Assembly: GCA_907165135.1 (NCBI GenBank)
Contig: OU015568.1
Location: forward strand, 7,068,001 to 7,132,000
Origin: Oikopleura dioica
Taxonomy: Eukaryota > Animalia > Chordata
Reading direction: 5' to 3'
DNA length: 64,000 nt
Shown in pieces: positions 37,380 to 47,200 of the stretch. Made by a program: the position numbers and the translations under genes. The number at the start of each line of letters is the position of its first letter. Within the stretch, counting starts at the first letter, position 1. The notes beneath the pieces are model-generated. The model was not told the origin of the DNA, searched no databases, and was given only the letters and a program-made list of their open reading frames with translations.

Positions 37380-40300
37380 TCAGCGTGCAATATTCCGAGC
37401 GCCCGAGCAGCTCAGTTGGCGATAACGGTGTGTAGTACGCTTCGACTTTTTCATAAAGTAAAATAACGCGAAAGTGAAGAATGAAGAAATAATAATGATA
37501 ACAACCAGCTTGTCAAGCTTGGGCTCTGCAAAGTCGAACCCAGGAAGGGGTACGATGTCGTAAGGCTCGGCTGGAGAAGAGGTTTTCTATTTTTTAATAG
37601 AAATCGTCCATTTTTCATTTAAAAAATGGAAGATCATTATGATCAATCGAGATTCTCTAAGAGTCTTTACATGCACGAAATTAGTTCAGTATCAATAAGT
37701 GCTGGAAATAGTCGTTTAAAAAGCATGCAATGGGCTCTGTGATCGCGAAATCGGGAAAGTCTCATGCTCCTAAAGCTTTTACGGAACGAGCTCGAATTCA
37801 AGGTTGATTCGACAAACTCAAGGCCTGGAAAATGGTTCATTAGAATTTTCTACAACACTGAGAGTTGGACATAAATTGAACCGTAACTGAGGACGAAATA
37901 AGCTTTCGCGATGCTAGTTTTCGACCAAAAGCGAGCAAATACTTCAGCACTTGGAGCTCGGTTAACAACTAAAAACGAACAACACCAAAACATAACACGA
38001 AAAGAACGAAGAAAACCGCTCCTGGGTTGCGTAATGGGCGTGAACTGGAGCGGGAACTTTTGGAGATGCACTCTTCTTCGGCGGATCCAGTGCAAATGAG
38101 GCAGTTTGGGTTGCATGGCTTGCAAATGTTGAGCGCGGCGGTGGGGGAGGCTTGCTCCTGGGTTAGGTTCGTGTCTGAGCGGTAGGTTCCGAGGGGACAG
38201 TCGGAGAAGCAGGCTTGTTGGGTTGGGTCGAAGACTTGCGCTTTTTCGGACTAAAAATTAATTGAAAAATTCGTAAAATCGAAGAAGAGAATCTCCATAC
38301 CTCGCAGAGAAGCTCGTACTGATCTTTTCCAGTTCCATGGACGATCAGTTCAAATTTATCAATCGTTCCACCAAGGTTTCCTCCGACTAAATTTTCAATC
38401 CTAATCAGCCAAGGTTTCTCCGGCGCTAGGTAAGGCCGCTCATCCCACATGTGAACGGTGAGAAAGTGAAATCCGGTAAAGCCATTCATCGACTTATCGT
38501 GCGGTCTCCTGTCGAGAATGTTGGAAACTGTGCCACTAGGAGAGACGAGCGTGATTCGCAGACTACCACGATTTGGGTAAGACAACGAAATCTTAGCCAG
38601 GACGTGCTCGGTGTAGTGGATCGCCTTGATACACTCCGAGTTGATCTGAAACTCTTCTTCGAACACGCTCGAGCTGAAGAGCATTTGCTTTCTTTTCGTA
38701 ATAACTGGAGTCGAACACTTTCTTTGTTCAGGAACAGTGGTCCAATTTGCGGCTAACGAGACTAGAGCCCCAGCGTCCATCAGACCGTACCCATAATGAT
38801 GCGAGTAATCTCTGAAAAAATGACTTGGATTCGAAGTCGAAAGTTACTGAATTTACCTGCCAGCGCCGTTGACAGCCCAGTCCGTCGTCTTCAGCAAGCG
38901 TTTCTTGGAAGTATGAACGATGAGATGTTGAACATCTCGCCAAGTTAGATTCGGGTTAGCTTCCAAAACAAGCGCTAGAATTGCTGCAGCGATCGGAGCG
39001 GATGCTGACGTACCAGTGTGACTGAAAATATTGCAAATTAAGAGTGGTATGAGTGCTTACTTTTTGGTGCAGATCTTTCTCAAGTCTGTGGTAACGATTT
39101 GTCGCTCCCCCATTCCTCCGGAAGAATAAGTGGATGCGAGAGTAGATGCGCACGCTTCAGAGTACCAGGGCACGTTTTCTTTCTCCGAGGTCGATGAAAT
39201 GCTGACGGTGTAGATTGAATTCGTATATCCGTCACAGTTGCAGTTGTCCTAGGTAAGAAAAATACGTCAAATAAACATCGTTTACAGATGTGGACTTGGC
39301 TGGGCAGCCCAGGTAGCCCGCAGCTAGCTGGAAAGAGCGGCAAACTATATCTACGTTTGTGGAAAAAATCATCTGGCAATCATCTTTGTATATAAATTGT
39401 AACACACCTGGTATCGGCCTCCGTTGCCAGATGCCCAGACAAAGATGCTTCCTTTTCCTTTACGTCCGTCCATTGCGCCTGTGTGAAAGGCTGTGCGCGC
39501 TGCTCGATCTGGTCCATCGACCTAAGGGAATCATAAAATATCATTTAACGCCCGGATTACTGTTTCGCCGTCATCATCAGGCCCCCAGCTTGCGGAATAA
39601 ATGTCCACGTACTGCGGATTATGACCAATCGACTGCCCTTCAACCAAATCGGTTACATCTCCGTCCAGCATTCTGATCCCCCCAATTTTCGCGTTATAAG
39701 CAATTCCAGGGATGCAAACTCCATTGCCAAACTCACCGGCAACTTCTCCAGCGCATCGAGTCCCGTGACGATTACTTTCCTTCTTGTAGCCAATAACTTG
39801 CTCTGTCAGACGATAACGAGTTTCCGTCGGATTTCGGTAGGAATTTACGTCGGTGAAGTTGATACGCGAGTTTTCACTGTTGTACTGAGGCATTGGGTCA
39901 TCGTCTCCGCCGTTGATATCACGTGAGGCTTTTGCATCATAATTTTTGATCAAGTCCGGATGGTCCCGTTCGATCCCATCATCCAGGAGAGTGACTACTA
40001 CTCCTTGACCAGTGTATCCTTTTCCGACGGTTTTGAATCTAAATGATTAGTCGCCAAACTCGTGATGGAAGAAAGAATTAACGGATTCCTTTCATTTACT
40101 GAAAAATGACCGTTTTAAACCGTTTCCTAGGGCCCACGCTCCGGTGACATTCATATGTCGGATATCGCTGTCTACATTCGTAACTGCGTTTTCGTTTCTG
40201 TCCTCAAAGTCCGGGTTCATGTACCACATGTATTCGTACAGCGGATCATTGGGAGAAAAGTCAGTGTCGAGGAGGTCCCGCTTCACGCGTTTTTTCACTC

Positions 40301-40771
40301 GTTGCTGATCGATTCCAAGCACATTTGGCTCCTTGCCGATTGGGGATGTGGATAAATCAACTGCGATAGGATTTTTAAAAGCATAGAAGAAAAACTCCTT
40401 TTTTAGTTTGAAATCCGAAGCTTGAGAAAATTCGCCAGTTGCGGATCGCTTTAACCGTCGCTTACGCAGATGAAAAATATTTCCAACGACATGTCCGAGA
40501 TAATCGAATCCATGTTTCTCGGCCAAGTTCTTTGCGATTTCTTCAGCCGCTTCAGCTCCGTTTTCCGGGTTGATTTCGATGGCGAACGAGTTTGTTAGCT
40601 TCCCGTGAAGGAGGCTTATGTTGAGTTGAAACAGAAAAACCTGAAATTGAATAAATCGAAATTGCCAATATATCGTGTTAAAGATTGAAATCTATGTAAT
40701 CAGCAAAATCAATTATAAACTTGGTCTCATGAACATGTTTTTAACATCGAAAATGACCGGACTTGAGGCAT
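37380..40771 (-). CDS. FURIN: Furin-like proprotein convertase (prodomain, subtilase, P domain, Cys-rich region, TM, YRQL tail); 5' end tentative
   Basis: RVKR maturation site; catalytic motifs [14 protein letters not shown] and GTSASAP; oxyanion WASGNGG; YGYGLMDAG; [11 protein letters not shown]; [19 protein letters not shown] followed by YRQL. Confidence 0.9.
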
Positions 40772-41583
40772 GTTTCGAGTGATAACTTCCAAGTTCGAGA
40801 AGGATTAATCGAATTTATTATCCTGTAGTGGGGTTTTCGACTTACCCATTTCATAATAATTCTGTGTTTACGTCTCTGGTCTTGAATTTGTCATTTGGCG
40901 GTCCGATCCCAGTCACTAATCTGAACGAGTATTTGCTTGCTATTTGTTTACTCGCGAAGAAATTTATCCAGAGGGAGAATTTTTCAATTCCATTTGTCTA
41001 TGACCTTTTGAATGAGAATGAGAGCGGTTGGATTTCCGTGGGTAAATGAGAGACTTTATCTTATCTCCAAAAAAGATACTGCTTTTACGGGTTGGTCGTT
41101 CTAGGGTTATTTTCAAGAGGGATAAGATTCCGACGGAATTTAACCTGAATTATGTAAGGGAGATAAAGGAGAAGGCAAAGTTAATTATTGATAGACTGAA
41201 TAGAATATTAGATATTTGAGTTTTAAATTTACTGTTGTTTAAGTTTGATCATTTTTTAATAAGAAACATGCAATAACGAGCAATTAGCAGGAACTGACGA
41301 AAATAATGAACAGGCAATGTGGCTAATTTCGTCAAAAACGATCAAATAAGGGCCAAAAATCGCTAAAAATAGCAAAATCACAGGAAAATAATGGTGAAAG
41401 GAATGTTTTTCTACAATCCTATTCTGTATTATGAAGAAGATTAATTGAAGATTTTCTTCGAATAAATCATTTTCTTATTAAAATTCTCTCAAGGAAGTTC
41501 TCTTTTTTAGAAATCCAGGACTAGAACTGAGAAAATTGTAGTTAAAATTTGGCGGTTGGCGGTGAAATTTAGTGCATGAAATC

Positions 41584-41712
41584 GATTGGCGCGCGAAAAG
41601 TGAATAATTTTAGGGGATTTTGGAGGCGGAGGAGAAAAGTGGAACTGGAGCGAGGGCGCAGCGCCAAAAGGATCGATCCAGCCAGATTGGCCACGGACCC
41701 ACGCAGCCAATA
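41584..41712 (+). promoter_or_regulatory. Geminin promoter: E2F-type site overlapping a CCAAT box, plus two more CCAAT boxes
   Basis: GATTGGCGCGCGAAAA at 41584-41599; further ATTGG/CCAAT near 41686 and 41708. Typical of G1/S promoters. Confidence 0.6.
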
Positions 41713-41788
41713 GAAATTCCCAAAACTGGAAAAACGCGAAGAAAGAATTATTCACCAAGTTTTATTATATTTACTCGAGGGCGGGGAG

Positions 41789-42451
41789 ATGAATAAGCAG
41801 AAGAGAATCACAGGTGAGAAGAAAAATGGAAAATTATTTTTTTGAGAAAAATAACTAGAGAAAGATTTTAGCGTCATTTTCTTCAAAGAAAGTTTCAGTA
41901 ATAGCCAAATTTTCGATTTTTCTTGAATTTTCTTTTCGATTTTCGGCCTGATTTGGCTTTTTGAGCAAAAAAAAACGCGAATTTAACCAATTTTGATCAA
42001 ATTTGGGCAAAATTGATTGAATTTGGTCTTTTATTTGGCTCAAAAAGCCATATACGACCGAAAATCGCAAAGAAAACTCGAGAGATAAATTTTCTTTATT
42101 GAAAATTACGATTTATCTTCGTTCTTCATTATTTTTTTGAATTTTGATAAATTCTCATTTCCCTTTTTAGATTTCGCGATAAAGAAGCCAAAGCCTTCCA
42201 CTCCCGATCTGACTTCTACTGAAGCAAATGAAGCCTACTGGAAAGAACTGGCAAGCGAGCGGGAAAAAGCGCTGAACGAAACTTTGGAAGAAAACGAAGA
42301 TCTGAAAGAGCTGCTGGAAACAATCAACGACGACGTTTCCGGTCTTGAGAAAGAAAACGACACGCTAAAGGAAGAGAATGAAATAATGCTCGAAAAGGCG
42401 AATCGTTTGGAGAGCCTTACAGAGACGCTCAACGAAATTATCAACGAGTGA
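41789..42451 (+). CDS. GMNN: Geminin, 101 aa (exons 41789-41813 and 42171-42451)
   Basis: DLTSTEANEAYWKELASEREKALNETLEENEDL matches the geminin coiled coil. No C-terminal TIRT domain, so not GEMC1 or MCIDAS. Confidence 0.85.
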
Positions 42452-42618
42452 AAAATAGAAGAAAAGAAGAAGACTTTCTTGATTCCAAAATAGCCCAGTT
42501 TTGTTTTGTTTTTGCACTGCCAACAGTGGAGTTCTTGTTTTATAGAGAAAAAGTTGTGAATAATTTCTTCCGTTTTTAGACTGCGTCGACTGACCATAGT
42601 CCGTAGTTACCAACAACC

Positions 42619-44005
42619 ATGGCTGCCACTGCTCTTCAATCCCAATTCAGTAAGTTCTCCCCTTCATCTCATTTTTCTATTCTCTTCGTTCTTTAGGCAC
42701 TCGCCCAATTTCCTGCTTTTCCTTCAACGCCGATCGTTCAAAAGTTGCACTGTCGCTGAATGATCCTGTCATCTACATTTTCAAACATACTGGTGCCGGA
42801 AAATGGGCGAAGGTAAAACTCTTTTCTCAAAAAATAATAGCTTCTTATTGTAATTTTAGACCGATGAGCTGCGAGAACATACTGGCAAAGTTACAGGAGT
42901 CAGCTGGGCGCCCAAATCCAACCAGATCGTTTCTTGCGGCGCTGATCGAAACGCTTATGTTTGGAAGCAAAATAACGGTAATTCACTTTGATGGAAAGAG
43001 ATTGAAAGAAAGCCGTGCTGTTTCCGCAGCATCTTGAGCATCCTTGTTCCTTCTTTAACTTCCTCGTTATTACGTAAACACGTAAATAATACGTTCACGT
43101 GCTGATCAGAGCCTTACTCGTGACATTCAGAAGGAGTATGGAAACAAGTGATGGTTCTGATCCGAGTCCAGCGAGGCGCCATTACCGTAAAATGGTCGCC
43201 CCAAGAAAACAAGTTCGCGATCGGAACGGCCGCCCGTCTCATTTCTATCTGCTACTACGAAGCGAGCAACGACTGGTGGGTCTGCAAACACATCAAAAAG
43301 CCGATCCGGTAAGTCATTTCACATATCTCCTCTTCTACAATCATCAGATCATCTGTTCTCTCACTCTCCTGGCATCCAAACAACATTCTCCTGGCCGCAG
43401 GAACGTCGGATTTCAAATGCCGCGTCTTCTCAACTTATCTCAAAGAGATCGAAGAAAAGCCAGCGGCAACGAGCTGGGGAAAGAAAATGTCCTTCGCGAA
43501 TCTGATGGGCGAGTTCGGCACTGGCGTCGGCGGCTGGATTCATGGCTGTTCTTTCAGCGACGATGGTGAGCGACTCGCATTTATTGGCCACGATTCTACC
43601 GTGTCCTTCGTCCAAGGAGGGATGGAATCGTCGATCGCCACGAAGACCCAGTTCTTACCCTTTACCGACTGCACTTGGATCTCGCCAAATGCTGTGGTCG
43701 CCGTTGGATTTGACTGCAATCCGATGGTTTTCAACTTGCAAGGACCTGGATTCTTCTTCTCCAACAAGTGCGACGACTCGGACAAGAAAAGCGGCGGCTC
43801 AGTTCTTTCAGGCCGCGCCATGTTCCAAGCAATGGACCGAATGGCCTCTTCTACCAGCTCCGAAACGATCAAGACGAAGCACAAGAACACCATTCTCTCC
43901 GTCTCCCGAACCGCCGACGGTTTCGCTACTGGCGGCGCTGATGGCCAAATCATTCAGTGGAATGTCAACGCCCTCGCTTCGAAATTCTCGTCTATGAAGC
44001 TCTAA
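42619..44005 (+). CDS. ARPC1: Arp2/3 complex subunit 1 (p41-Arc), WD40
   Basis: [86 protein letters not shown]. Confidence 0.95.
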
Positions 44006-44184
44006 TTTCTTCCCTCCTTCTTCTCTCATTCCCGAAATCAAAATTCTGCAATCAAGAAGAAAAAACATCCTGTTTTCAACATGTTTTCTCCAAAAATAAA
44101 TTGACCTAAAATAAACGTATGAAAACCCAAAACATTTATAATCGTGGCCGCGGCTATTTCTGTCGCTGGCCACGATGGTCTCTC

Positions 44185-44240
44185 ACCGAGCGCAGCTGTG
44201 ACTCAGGCAAGCAAGAAAAGGTGGCAAGCAGTTGACTAGG
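44185..44240 (+). promoter_or_regulatory. Paired E-boxes upstream of the myomesin-like gene
   Basis: GCAGCTG near 44192 and GCAGTTG near 44228, 60-110 bp before the ATG; these are MRF-type E-boxes. Confidence 0.4.
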
Positions 44241-44297
44241 TAGGAGGCAGCGACCTGTAGGATGATAACGTTGGGTTAAGTTAGTCCCTCAGAGATC

Positions 44298-47200
44298 ATG
44301 CCACGACAGTTTGGGTAAGTTTTTTCCGTTAGAATTTGATTTGAGAGCAAAAAATAGCCCGACATTGATAAAAAAATAAATTATTAGTTCTCTGACCCCG
44401 GCTAAGGGAGGGGTCATCGACTATAAAAAGAGGGATCACTCGTCCCGAGCAGCAGCTCAGGACAGGAGATTCGGGGAAACAACTATCGCAGGCGCCGGCG
44501 CATTCGATTCCAAAGCACCAATGTCCATTGTTTCTCTTCCTCTGAATCTTCGAGGCTCCGCTGCTAGGTAAACTTCTTCCCAATATTCCTCATCGCAATT
44601 TTCAGGGCTGTCCCCGTCGAGGGCACTGCCGATATCGGCAGCGATGGCGTCGTCGACATCCGCCTCAAGGGATCTCTTGGAGCTTTCCAGAGCCAGGATC
44701 GAGCCGCTTCTCGCGCTGCTGAGGCTCTTGAGCCAGTTGTGCCACACTACTTGAACATCACTCAACAGTACAACCGACCCAAATCATCCGAGCCTGGACA
44801 GAAATTCTACACCTGGGCCGGCAAAGGGAAGACCCCTGAGCCGACTCGACTGGGTCGATACGACATCCCAACTGGCAACTCAAACGTTATTCCAGATCTT
44901 GCTGAACACCAGGGAGATATCAAGGATGTTGCTTCTTACATTGCTAATCGAAAGGCTTACCCAAGCTACGATGAAGAAGACACCAAGCCTACTCAGTACA
45001 AGATGCGAACTCGACGACGAAAAGCTGAGGGCGCTGGTTCTGAGGGCCCTCTTGCGAAGGATCAGCCAGCTGCGGAACCGAAAGAAGATGCTCTTTACGA
45101 GCCAGTTACAATCAAATATCTTGCTCCAAAACCACCAGTGTTCGAACACGGTATTCGATCGCACACCATTTGGGAGAATATGACTGTGAAGTTTACTTGC
45201 CGTGTTGATGGTAGACCTACCCCATCTGTCACCTGGTACCACAACATGATCCCAATTCAGCCAGAGCTTCATGCTGCTGGAAAGTATAAGATCACTGAGC
45301 GAAATGGCGTCAATACTCTTGAAGTTTCTCGATGCCAGATTGCTGATGCTGGAACTTATCGAGTTTCTGTTCAGAACTTCAAGGGTGAACTTTCTAGCTA
45401 TGCTACTCTTGTTGTCAAACGATACGATGGTGGTCGATATGGCTACTACGACATCAAGTCTGGTTACAACATCAAAAAGCCTACAGACTACCCAGATGTT
45501 CAAGAACTCAATGTTCCTGGATACCCACGATTTGCTACCAAACTTTACAATCAATCTGTCTGGGAAGGCGATGCGATTACCTTTGCTTGCCATGTCGAAG
45601 GAAAACCCCCACCAAATGTCTTCTGGACTTTGAACGGGAAGTCGATCGAAACTGAACCCGAGCGTGTCCGAGTCTCTTTTGATGGCATCAAAGCCACCGT
45701 CTCGATTCTCCGAGCTTTCACTGACTACGAGGGTGAATGGTGCTGCCGAGCTTACAATAGCTGCGGTGCTGCTGTTTCCAAGATGTTCCTCTACGTCAGA
45801 GGCCGACATGGTCCGCCATCTGCACCAACCAATCTCGATGTTGTCGAAACTACTCGAGACCATATCATGCTTACCTGGAAACGACCTGGCTACATTGGTC
45901 ACTTTGGCGGTGCTGAAGTCGATGGCTACATCATTGAGTACGCAGCTGCTGGTTCTGCTTTGTGGACTCAGCTCTCTACCAAGCTCATCTCTCTTATGCG
46001 ATACCCAGTCACTGGCCTCGAAGAAGGAACTGCATATTTTTTCCGAGTAAGATCCGTCAACCGATGGGGTAAGTCTCAGTGGTGCAAAGCCATCGGGCCA
46101 GTCGCCTGTCGAGACACCGGTGCTGCCAGATGCGCTGCTGAAATCGCTGAGGATAAATTTTCCTTGATGCCTCCAGAGGCTGGAGATATTCAAGTTTATG
46201 AGGAAGAAGAGCCAGCTGTACCGGAAATTCCTGAAAACGTTCGGGTTCACTCCACTACTCTCGATGGAACCATCTGCGTTGCCTTTGACGCTGTCGAGGG
46301 CGATGTTGACGGCTACTTTGTCGAATATGCTCTTGCTAAGAAGAATGAATGGAGCACCTTCAATTCTGCTCCAATCAAGGTTGCTGGAGAGCCTTACCCT
46401 ATTTCCGGATTGGAACTCGGAAAGCAATTCCAGTTCCGAGTTCGAGCAAAGAATCACTACGGATTTTCTGAGTCCTCCTTGCCCACGGAAATTGTCTGGT
46501 GCGGTGAGCCACAGGAAGTGGAAGACGAAGAACAGGATGAAGAGCGAGAGGATTCTGGTTCTGATGAGGCTCAGGTTATCTCTGCCGATGCTCCAAAGTG
46601 CTATTCCGTTTGCACAGATGGTACTGACTTTGAAGGTCGATACCGAGGTCCTCCTACTCCTCCTAGATCCGTCAACTGGGCTAAAGCTACTCGAGAGTAT
46701 GTTGAAGTCACATGGGCTCCACCAGGGAAATCTGGAGGTGAACAAGTCGCCTACTACTTGGAGAAGCAAAAGCTCGGTTCTGGTGTCTGGGAATTCTGCA
46801 ACGAGAAGGCGATCGCCATGAACCACTACATCGTGAACGAGCTTGATATGGGCGAGAAATACATTTTCCGAGTCCGAGCTGTGAACTCCAAGGGTTCGTC
46901 TGGATTTTCCGAGCCATCTGAGCCAGTGATTGCTTATGATGGAATTCGTCCCCCAGCTTGGTACGGAAACGCCTTGTCTTTCTTCCGTGTCTCGCGATTT
47001 GATGGAAAACCTGATGTTACCAAAACCTCCGTCAAAGTTTCCTGGGACGAGCCTCAGAGAGATGGCGGCGCGCCAATCATCGGATACTATCTCGAAGTTC
47101 GAGAATACGGTGGCAAGTGGAAGCAAGTCAACAACAAAGCATTTACTCAGCGACACTTCACCGTTGACGGTCTTACTCCTCAGCGATACTACCAGTTCCG

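What the first reader, a model, noticed from the sequence alone, without database searches (positions are those of the whole stretch)
41789..42451. Minimal geminin with no D-box but a Cdt1-like PIP/TD motif at the N-terminus
Seen: the 101-aa protein begins MNKQKRITDFAIKKPK and contains no RxxL. QKRITDFA fits Q-x-x-I-T-D-F. It lacks the second aromatic, and the +4 residue is Pro, with Lys at +2, +3 and +5. Known: canonical geminin is destroyed by APC/C through an N-terminal D-box and is stable in S phase, while TD-type PIP degrons (Cdt1 QRRVTDFF, p21, Set8) trigger PCNA-coupled CRL4-Cdt2 destruction in S phase; Oikopleura grows largely by endocycles. Inference: licensing control may be rewired, with geminin tethered to PCNA or cleared in S phase.
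Basis: partly seen in the sequence, partly recalled or inferred. Interest (0 to 1): 0.8.

Follow-up and report, generated by a model that had tools for sequence, protein, structure and literature searches.

The report
D-box-less larvacean geminin, PIP-like tail
This is a real, expressed 101-residue geminin (DNA-replication licensing inhibitor) of Oikopleura dioica that has lost the usual destruction signal and carries a strictly conserved N-terminal peptide, QKRITDF, which resembles but does not fully match the PCNA-docking "PIP degron" of Cdt1, so a replication-coupled control of geminin is a testable but unproven idea.

Summary
Window 41789-42451 encodes a two-exon, 101-aa protein that starts MNKQKRITDFAIKKPK. 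It has no RxxL and scores above Pfam's Geminin cut-off. Capped cDNA contigs from sibling lineages and species show this is the true first exon, with no D-box exon upstream. QKRITDF is invariant in five species-level lineages whose coiled-coil cores are only 47-65% identical. Within the O. dioica complex the tail shows synonymous changes almost exclusively.

- In every ortholog PIP position 8 is A, T or I rather than aromatic, and +4 is P or E, never basic. The canonical CRL4-Cdt2 degron rule is therefore failed.
- The flanking lysines are lost in one species.
- This gene is one of at least three larvacean geminin paralogs. The others keep an ABBA-like APC/C-type motif, and one relative keeps a D-box-like motif, so this is not the organism's only geminin.
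- Canonical invertebrate geminins carry the ABBA-like motif at the equivalent place. Here its key aromatic has decayed.

Q1, I4 and F7, the PCNA-contact positions, are the residues conserved across two paralog families. The pattern psi-x-x-F-A/I has structural precedent in Pol delta. My best reading is a non-canonical PCNA-docking motif, more likely a tether than a degron (confidence about 0.4).

The parts
41574..41628 (+). Conserved promoter block. It holds an E2F-like site (TTTCGCGCGC, 41589-41598, minus strand) next to ATCGAT palindromes.
   Evidence: The block is nearly invariant among the window, the Bergen reference and a metagenome lineage, while the flanks diverge. It is the only TTTSSCGCGC in the 64 kb window, but one such match is not significant by itself (43 of 100 shuffles have at least one).
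41706..41788 (+). Inferred transcription start (at GCCAATAG) and 5' UTR. There is no upstream ATG, and an in-frame stop lies at 41711-41713.
   Evidence: The transcript-derived protein P0003 begins with adaptor-derived MG and then translates GCCAATAGAAATTTC... of the sibling lineage. The frame and stop were read.
41789..41813 (+). Coding exon 1: MNKQKRIT plus the first base of Asp9.
   Evidence: Across three O. dioica lineages only synonymous changes occur here.
41798..41813 (+). First part of the QKRITDF motif (Q4 to T8, plus the G of D9).
41814..42170 (+). GT..AG intron of 357 bp, phase 1, splitting T8|D9.
   Evidence: The splice junction is confirmed at protein level by the transcript-derived P0003.
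41921..42083 (.). Inverted repeat inside the intron (64-nt arms, 80% complementary), hairpin- or MITE-like.
42171..42451 (+). Coding exon 2 (the rest of D9 to E101, then TGA).
42171..42193 (+). Second part of the motif and its basic flank: (D)FAIKKPK.
42230..42445 (+). Geminin core (residues 29-100): Cdt1-binding and dimerisation coiled coil, including the YWKE..REKALNETLEEN signature.
   Evidence: Pfam PF07412. Alignment to solved geminin 2zxx, 1uii and 2wvr. AlphaFold2 predicts a single helix 29-100 with pLDDT above 94.
42452..42618 (+). Intergenic spacer of 167 bp to the next gene (ARPC1, ATG at 42619), with a conserved element just before that ATG. The arrangement looks like an operon.
   Evidence: The bicistronic cDNA contigs L003 and L004 carry geminin followed by ARPC1.

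Best explanation
Shown: the locus is a functional, E2F-type-promoted, two-exon gene for a minimal geminin. It is one of at least three geminin paralogs of the Oikopleura dioica lineage. The protein has a 28-residue disordered tail followed by the Cdt1-binding and dimerising coiled coil.

Shown: the whole D-box-bearing N-terminal region of canonical geminin is absent. The ABBA-like motif that canonical invertebrate geminins carry between D-box and coil has lost its key aromatic here.

Shown: what is kept, invariantly, is the short linear motif Q-K-R-I-T-D-F-x-[I/V].

Inferred: this motif is a non-canonical PIP-type PCNA-docking peptide. Gln would sit in the Q-pocket, Ile4 and Phe7 would form a two-pronged hydrophobic plug, and the TD pair would raise affinity. 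It would bring this geminin to PCNA on replicating DNA.

Inferred: the basic residue at +4, which Cdt2 recruitment requires, is absent in every ortholog. The more likely outcome is therefore replication-coupled tethering or competition at PCNA, not canonical CRL4-Cdt2 destruction. Neither outcome has been shown.
For: - The gene model is confirmed, and the splice junction is seen in a transcript-derived protein.
- Geminin membership is supported by Pfam and by alignment to solved structures.
- The cDNA contigs L003 and L004 begin with what I read as a template-switch adaptor remnant followed by about 30 nt of UTR. That indicates true 5' ends with no further coding exon.
- QKRITDF is identical in the O. 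dioica complex (three lineages) and in L003, L004, L007 and L010, whose cores are 47-65% identical to each other and whose tails are otherwise unalignable.
- In residues 1-22 there are 0-2 non-synonymous against 6-9 synonymous differences at dS of about 0.7-1.5.
- The tail is predicted disordered, as a linear motif requires.
- Across paralogs 1 and 3, Ile4 and Phe7 are invariant and Gln1 is nearly so (displaced by one residue in P0022), while positions 5-6 vary in paralog 3 (TQ, KD, TS). These are exactly the PCNA-contact positions.
- Structural precedents exist for psi-x-x-F-A/I two-fork plugs: human Pol delta p125 GLLAFA and yeast Pol3 GLMSFI. The one-aromatic degron of p12 is KRLITDSY (PMC10087552).
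- TD is rare outside CRL4-Cdt2 substrates and confers high PCNA affinity. Cdt1 R+4A still binds PCNA but is stable (PMC3973308).
Against:
- The second aromatic of the PIP consensus is missing in all five lineages (A, T, T, T, I).
- K2 and R3 are invariant although these positions are normally free in PIP boxes. This hints at a different or additional partner.
- The residues after F7 align with a decayed ABBA-like motif: FTIFKD in paralog 3 against FTIRKE, FTVTKE and FAIKKP here. The motif could therefore be a remnant of an APC/C-related element.
- The presence of Cdt1, Cdt2 and a standard PCNA pocket in O. dioica was not checked.
Confidence: 0.4

Rival explanations
1. The motif is a true CRL4-Cdt2 PIP degron. 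This geminin would be destroyed on chromatin-bound PCNA in S phase, replacing APC/C control. That could let endocycling cells relicense without APC/C activity.
For: - The TD dipeptide is invariant, and TD is reported to be nearly specific to CRL4-Cdt2 substrates.
- No D-box is found in any ortholog.
- Lysines at +3 and +5 are kept in four of five lineages.
- CRL4-Cdt2 is known to drive Drosophila endocycles (PMC8155957).
- The p12 degron shows that one aromatic can suffice.
Against: - B+4 is P or E in all orthologs, and acidic in four of them.
- In L010, +3 and +5 are N and Q.
- The +4 basic residue is described as essential: Cdt1 R+4A is stable.
- Destroying the Cdt1 inhibitor during S phase is functionally paradoxical unless other paralogs cover S and G2.
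Confidence: 0.15
2. The motif is the lineage-specific descendant of a geminin-family N-terminal element (the ABBA-like psi-x-psi-[FY]-x-[DE] motif plus its upstream extension). It would bind a non-PCNA partner, for example an APC/C co-activator or an unknown larvacean protein. The PIP resemblance would then be coincidental.
For: - 15 of 23 canonical geminins carry an ABBA-like motif downstream of the D-box, against 0.44 expected by shuffling. The consensus Fx[ILV][FY]x[DE] is from PMC5717348.
- Paralogs 2 and 3 keep it (VEIFKD, FTIFKD, FIKIYRE).
- Paralog 3 QQSIKD-FTIFKD aligns residue for residue with paralog 1 QKRITD-FTIRKE.
- K2 and R3 are invariant, which is unusual for a PIP box.
Against: - The ABBA position-4 aromatic, one of three anchor residues, is lost in every paralog-1 ortholog, and position 6 is Pro in O. 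dioica.
- The invariant block lies mostly upstream of the ABBA register.
- No known motif other than PIP fits Q..ITDF. RVxF, Cy/RxL, LxxIxE, LIR and SIM patterns were compared by eye from memory, and none fits.
Confidence: 0.25
3. The tail is essentially a nuclear localisation signal (basic cluster KQKR..KKPK) with no specific docking function.
For: - KKPK fits the monopartite K-[KR]-x-[KR] pattern (my own knowledge).
- Every ortholog has a basic cluster somewhere in the tail.
Against: The basic clusters shift in position and sequence between species (KKPK, RKEKPRK, TKEKARK, and PLKKNAKK much further downstream in L010). In contrast I, T, D and F, which are irrelevant to importin binding, are invariant.
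Confidence: 0.1

Closest known systems
Canonical metazoan geminin (GMNN; Pfam PF07412)
   Same: The YWKE..ERRKAL..EN coiled-coil and Cdt1-binding core is shared. It aligns to human residues 93-145 and to mouse tGeminin. It is also probably an E2F-type cell-cycle gene.
   Different: - It is half the usual length.
- It has no D-box, whereas all 23 canonical geminins examined have R..L..[LIVM][QRE].
- It has no acidic C-terminal tail.
- Its ABBA-like motif is decayed.
- It belongs to a divergent larvacean clade with three paralogs (100/99 support).
PIP degron of Cdt1, p21 and Set8 (Q/N-x-x-psi-T-D-theta-theta-x-x-x-R/K)
   Same: It shares Q1, psi4, T5, D6 and an aromatic at 7, an extreme N-terminal position in a disordered tail, and nearby basic residues. 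From memory, the human Cdt1 N-terminus QRRVTDFFARRRP is strikingly similar.
   Different: Position 8 is A, T or I. The +4 residue is P or E and never basic. The basic flank is not conserved in L010.
Non-canonical two-fork-plug PIP motifs (Pol delta p125 GLLAFA, yeast Pol3 GLMSFI, p12 KRLITDSY)
   Same: The pattern psi-x-x-F followed by A or I matches ITDFA and ITDFI. A single aromatic is sufficient for PCNA binding in solved complexes (PMC10087552).
   Different: Those motifs lack the Gln and, except for p12, the TD. The p125 contact is helped by other surfaces of the polymerase. Reported affinities are modest, with Kd in the tens of micromolar.
ABBA motif of APC/C substrates and regulators (Fx[ILV][FY]x[DE])
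   Same: F10 and I/V12 occupy ABBA positions 1 and 3. Four of five lineages have E at position 6. The motif sits where canonical geminins and paralogs 2 and 3 carry a full match.
   Different: The position-4 aromatic is missing in all paralog-1 orthologs. O. dioica has Pro at position 6.

Membership tests
Geminin family (PF07412) | Profile match above the curated cut-off | tested here: met
   45.4 bits against a cut-off of 22.2, E=1e-11, for exon 2 alone.
Geminin family (PF07412) | Long parallel coiled-coil helix homologous to the Cdt1-binding and dimerisation segment | tested here: met
   Residues 21-78 align to 2zxx, 1uii and 2wvr geminin, better than to multicilin. AlphaFold2 predicts helix 29-100 with pLDDT above 94.
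Geminin family (PF07412) | N-terminal APC/C destruction box (RxxLxxLQP type) | tested here: not met
   There is no RxxL in the window protein or in any of the other six orthologous sequences. It is present in 23 of 23 canonical geminins.
Geminin family (PF07412) | Binds and inhibits Cdt1 | not testable with these tools
   Only sequence conservation of the binding segment can be shown.
Canonical PIP box (Q-x-x-psi-x-x-theta-theta) | Gln at 1, aliphatic at 4, aromatic at 7 | tested here: met
   Q4, I7 and F10 are invariant in five lineages. I and F are also invariant in paralog 3, and Q is nearly so.
Canonical PIP box (Q-x-x-psi-x-x-theta-theta) | Aromatic at position 8 | tested here: not met
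   Position 8 is A (O. dioica), T (L003, L004, L007) and I (L010). Only the unplaced relative P0022 has FF, and its Gln is displaced by one residue.
PIP degron (CRL4-Cdt2 substrate) | TD at positions 5-6 | tested here: met
   T8 and D9 are invariant in all paralog-1 orthologs.
PIP degron (CRL4-Cdt2 substrate) | Basic residue at +4 (B+4) | tested here: not met
   The +4 residue is P in O. dioica and E in L003, L004, L007 and L010. The rule is taken from PMC3973308 and PMC8871960.
PIP degron (CRL4-Cdt2 substrate) | Binds chromatin-bound PCNA, recruits Cdt2 and is degraded in S phase | not testable with these tools
   No complex prediction or experiment was available. O. dioica Cdt2, Cdt1 and PCNA were not retrieved.
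ABBA motif (Fx[ILV][FY]x[DE]) | Three non-polar anchors at positions 1, 3 and 4 and an acidic residue at position 6 | tested here: not met
   Positions 1 (F) and 3 (I/V) are present. Position 4 is K, T, R, P or S. Position 6 is P in O. dioica and E elsewhere.
KEN box degron | KEN in an accessible, disordered region, and conserved | tested here: not met
   The KEN at residue 69 lies inside the high-confidence helix. It is homologous to the human coil KEN and is replaced by AEN and DEN in L007 and L010.

The most novel reading that the evidence does not exclude
Larvaceans have evolved a geminin paralog whose activity or abundance is coupled to DNA synthesis through PCNA instead of to mitotic exit through APC/C. 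That would be a replication-coupled Cdt1 inhibitor, either tethered at forks or removed by CRL4-Cdt2. Together with two APC/C-motif-bearing paralogs, it would partition licensing control between mitotic cycles and endocycles.
Probability: 0.3. Interest if true: 0.8.

Novelty: new variant of a known kind. Interest (0 to 1): 0.58.

Why it matters
Geminin is the textbook APC/C-controlled brake on origin licensing. A conserved geminin that has dropped the D-box and instead carries a TD-type PCNA-docking-like peptide would show that the same inhibitor can be rewired to the replication fork. It occurs in an animal that grows almost entirely by endocycles. The three-paralog set (PIP-like only, PIP-like plus ABBA-like, and ABBA-like with or without a D-box-like motif) offers a natural dissection of degron logic. 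The hypothesis can be tested directly with a 20-residue peptide and a tail-GFP reporter. Separately, the ABBA-like motif seen in most invertebrate geminins may be a general co-degron. I found no description of it.

Tried and rejected
- Literature: no paper in the library links Oikopleura with geminin in substance, and none mentions Oikopleura with Cdt1.
- P0003 carries 23 extra N-terminal residues with a D-box-like RKLLESIIQP. I rejected this as coding. The 'MG' start matches what I read as the cDNA adaptor remnant seen on L003 and L004, the rest is the 5' UTR, the Bergen genome has a TAG in that frame, and the window's UTR does not conserve it.
- Mytilus QKPITIFVD looked like an ancestral PIP-like box. 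I rejected it because its I and F are ABBA positions 1 and 4, so it sits in a different register from the larvacean motif.
- The KEN in the coil was rejected as a degron.
- Patterns for PP1 RVxF, cyclin RxL, B56 LxxIxE, LIR and SIM were compared by eye from memory. None fits QKRITDF.
- The metagenome scan gave only five loci. Four were new contigs, none of them a new paralog-1 lineage.
- No multimer prediction tool was available.
- The species identity of L003, L004, L007 and L010 is inferred, not established by marker genes. The inference rests on the geminin-ARPC1 arrangement, a shared intergenic element and the tree.

Full report
**1. Observation**

The sequence at 41789-42451 is as described. 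Exon 1 (41789-41813) reads ATG AAT AAG CAG AAG AGA ATC ACA G, followed by GTGAGA. The intron ends ...TTTTTAG at 42170. Exon 2 runs from 42171 to the TGA at 42449-42451. The 101-aa product begins MNKQKRITDFAIKKPKPS and contains no RxxL. A KEN tripeptide does exist at residue 69. It lies inside the coiled coil, aligns with the KEN of the human and mouse geminin coil, sits in a helix predicted with pLDDT above 94, and is AEN or DEN in two orthologs. I therefore do not count it as a degron.

**2. Organism and family**

Exon 2 alone scores 45.4 bits against Pfam Geminin, whose cut-off is 22.2. The nearest database protein is the 101-aa 'unnamed protein product', called Geminin by UniRef, of Oikopleura dioica (Bergen reference). 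It is 91% identical. The window is collinear with that reference over 38590-45347. The gene order is a furin-like convertase on the minus strand, then geminin, ARPC1 and an Ig/fn3 gene. dS against Bergen is about 1.2, so the window comes from a deeply diverged member of the O. dioica complex. Residues 21-78 align to solved geminin coiled coils (2zxx, 1uii, 2wvr) better than to multicilin. AlphaFold2 gives a disordered tail (residues 1-28, pLDDT about 50) and one helix spanning 29-100.

**3. Is exon 1 the real start?**

Yes, on present evidence.
- A transcript-derived protein from a sibling lineage (P0003) contains ...MNKQKRITDFAIKK..., which confirms the splice.
- Two metatranscriptome contigs from more distant species (L003, L004) begin with ACATGGGGG. 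From my own knowledge I read this as the 3' end of a template-switch cDNA adaptor, which marks a capped 5' end. About 30 nt of UTR and the start codon of MGK...QKRITDF follow.
- P0003's extra 23 residues, which include a D-box-like RKLLESIIQP, are that adaptor ATG plus the 5' UTR. The Bergen genome has a TAG in that frame, the window's UTR does not conserve it, and no ATG lies between the inferred start (about 41706) and 41789.

**4. Conservation**
- Within the O. dioica complex (window, Bergen, metagenome contig L002), codons 4, 6, 7, 8, 14, 15, 16, 17, 18 and 20 differ only synonymously. The only replacement in residues 1-22 is T19N in one lineage, giving 0-2 non-synonymous against 6-9 synonymous differences.
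- Four further species-level lineages were recovered: L003 and L004 (cDNA), L007 and L010 (genomic, with exon 1 found upstream of the called ORFs).
- Their cores are 47-65% identical to O. dioica and to each other, and their tails are otherwise unalignable. All nevertheless read QKRITDF.
- Position 8 is A, T, T, T or I. Position +1 is I or V. Position +4 is P, E, E, E or E. Lysines at +3 and +5 are present except in L010, which has N and Q.
- These contigs are not taxonomically identified. I infer that they are larvaceans from three observations. L003 and L004 carry the same geminin-ARPC1 bicistronic arrangement. They share a non-coding element before the ARPC1 start. All four fall in a 100/99-supported clade with O. 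dioica.

**5. Family context changes the picture**

O. dioica has at least three geminins:
- Paralog 1 is this gene.
- Paralog 2 is a 143-aa protein (P0027, ...KAKVEIFKDSPKKRR...).
- Paralog 3 is annotated on the Okinawa X-specific region (P0012). A fuller form, P0140, reads ...SRQQSIKDFTIFKDKK....

A larvacean relative of paralog 2 (P0014) keeps a D-box-like RKKLSMR[IN]KN together with FIKIYRE.

All 23 canonical geminins I examined have the D-box. They come from molluscs, a brachiopod, echinoderms, hemichordates, a priapulid, cnidarians and vertebrates. Fifteen of them also have, further downstream, a motif matching psi-x-psi-[FY]-x-[DE] (VKVFED, ITIFVD, FTIFED, LKIFQD and others). Shuffling predicts 0.44 such sequences. 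This fits the ABBA motif Fx[ILV][FY]x[DE], which binds APC/C co-activators (PMC5717348).

Paralog 3 QQSIKD-FTIFKD aligns residue for residue with paralog 1 QKRITD-FTIRKE (L004), -FTVTKE (L003) and -FAIKKP (O. dioica). The F7 of the PIP-like reading is therefore ABBA position 1, and paralog 1 has lost the ABBA position-4 aromatic. The PIP-like look of Mytilus QKPITIFVD is in a different register, and I discount it.

**6. Testing the PIP-degron reading against published rules**

The degron signature is Q/N-x-x-psi-T-D-theta-theta-x-x-x-R/K. TD is rare outside CRL4-Cdt2 substrates and raises PCNA affinity. [quoted passage not shown]

The larvacean motif meets Q1, psi4, T5, D6 and theta7. It fails theta8 and B+4 in every ortholog, so it cannot be filed as a canonical PIP degron.

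PCNA docking remains plausible for three reasons:
- Solved complexes show two-fork plugs with one aromatic. Human Pol delta p125 GLLAFA and yeast Pol3 GLMSFI have exactly the psi-x-x-F-A/I pattern, and the p12 degron is KRLITDSY (PMC10087552).
- Across paralogs 1 and 3, I4 and F7 are invariant and Q1 nearly so, while positions 5-6 drift in paralog 3 (TQ, KD, TS).
- The motif lies in a disordered N-terminal tail, the usual setting for PIP boxes.

One observation counts against this reading: K2 and R3 are invariant, which PCNA binding does not require.

**7. Mechanism**

My best reading (about 0.4) is that QKRITDF-x-[I/V] is a non-canonical PCNA-docking peptide that brings this D-box-less geminin to replicating DNA. 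By the R+4A precedent, this would happen without Cdt2-mediated destruction.

The rivals are:
- a genuine but rule-bending CRL4-Cdt2 degron (0.15);
- a derivative of the geminin ABBA-type element that binds another partner, with a coincidental PIP resemblance (0.25);
- a mere nuclear localisation signal (0.1), which explains the mobile basic clusters but not the invariant I, T, D and F.

What is shown is the gene, its expression, the loss of the D-box, the invariance and disorder of the motif, and the paralog set. What is inferred is the partner and the consequence.

**8. Novelty and limits**

I found no publication on larvacean geminin, nor a description of a PIP-like or ABBA-like motif in geminin among the papers I opened. 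I classify the finding as a new variant of a known kind. I could not obtain O. dioica Cdt1, Cdt2 or PCNA, could not run a complex prediction, and could not name the species behind the metagenomic orthologs.

Noticed in passing
window 42452-42625; L003 408-566; L004 408-552: Geminin and ARPC1 lie 167 bp apart. In two other species they occur on single cDNA contigs (bicistronic), which suggests a conserved operon. An element of about 24 nt (GCGTYGACTGA.CAGAGTCCGT) is conserved just before the ARPC1 ATG in all three.
   Followed up: partly
P0027, P0012/P0140, P0014; L011, L014, L016: O. dioica-type genomes hold at least three geminin paralogs. Paralog 3 combines a Q..I..F box with a full ABBA-like FTIFKD. 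Paralog 2 has VEIFKD, and in another species a D-box-like RKKLSMR[IN]KN. The Okinawa annotation of paralog 3 (112 aa, starting MAFKRD) looks N-terminally truncated when compared with P0140.
   Followed up: partly
Proteins P0074, P0083, P0084, P0087, P0093, P0095, P0097, P0098, P0104-P0106, P0109, P0039, P0111, P0116: Most invertebrate geminins carry an ABBA-like motif (psi-x-psi-[FY]-x-[DE]) about 30-70 residues after the D-box: 15 of 23 against 0.44 expected. Hemichordates have the variant MIYEDP or VIYEDP. The vertebrate sequences seen here lack it. I did not find it described in the papers I checked.
   Followed up: partly
window 41921-41984 / 42020-42083: A 64-nt inverted repeat (80% complementary) sits inside the geminin intron. 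The Bergen and metagenome lineages appear, by eye in the alignment, to have different inverted repeats (GCGAAGCGAAG.../...CTTCGCTTCGC) at the same place. That would suggest independent hairpin or MITE insertions.
   Followed up: no
window 41574-41628 and 41706-41715: A promoter block of about 50 bp is nearly invariant across three lineages. It holds an E2F-like TTTCGCGCGC flanked by ATCGAT palindromes (DRE-like). The inferred transcription start coincides with a conserved GCCAATAG.
   Followed up: partly
window 41813/42171 versus L007 3423/3995 and L010 2409: The intron position differs between species. O. dioica splits Thr8|Asp9 (phase 1). L007 and L010 have a phase-0 intron after residue 24. 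This points to intron turnover within the tail.
   Followed up: no
P0004, P0005 (JGI metagenome gene calls): Prokaryote-style gene calls on Oikopleura DNA in marine metagenomes read from the intron into geminin exon 2. They are labelled 'predicted RNase H-like nuclease (RuvC/YqgF family)', which is a mis-annotation.
   Followed up: no
P0032 (fish-like), P0039 (Priapulus caudatus): Upstream of their D-boxes these geminins carry SVSIKNFF and AKITKFF. These are PIP-like psi-x-x-[FY]F peptides that resemble paralog 3 QSIKDF. Whether this is an old geminin feature or a coincidence is open.
   Followed up: no
P0087, P0095, P0099, P0100, P0120, P0115: Crinoid, hemichordate and coral geminins share a further motif upstream of the D-box, N[KR]MF[TS]P[AR]RK, which looks like a CDK-type [ST]P site. 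Its function is unknown to me.
   Followed up: no
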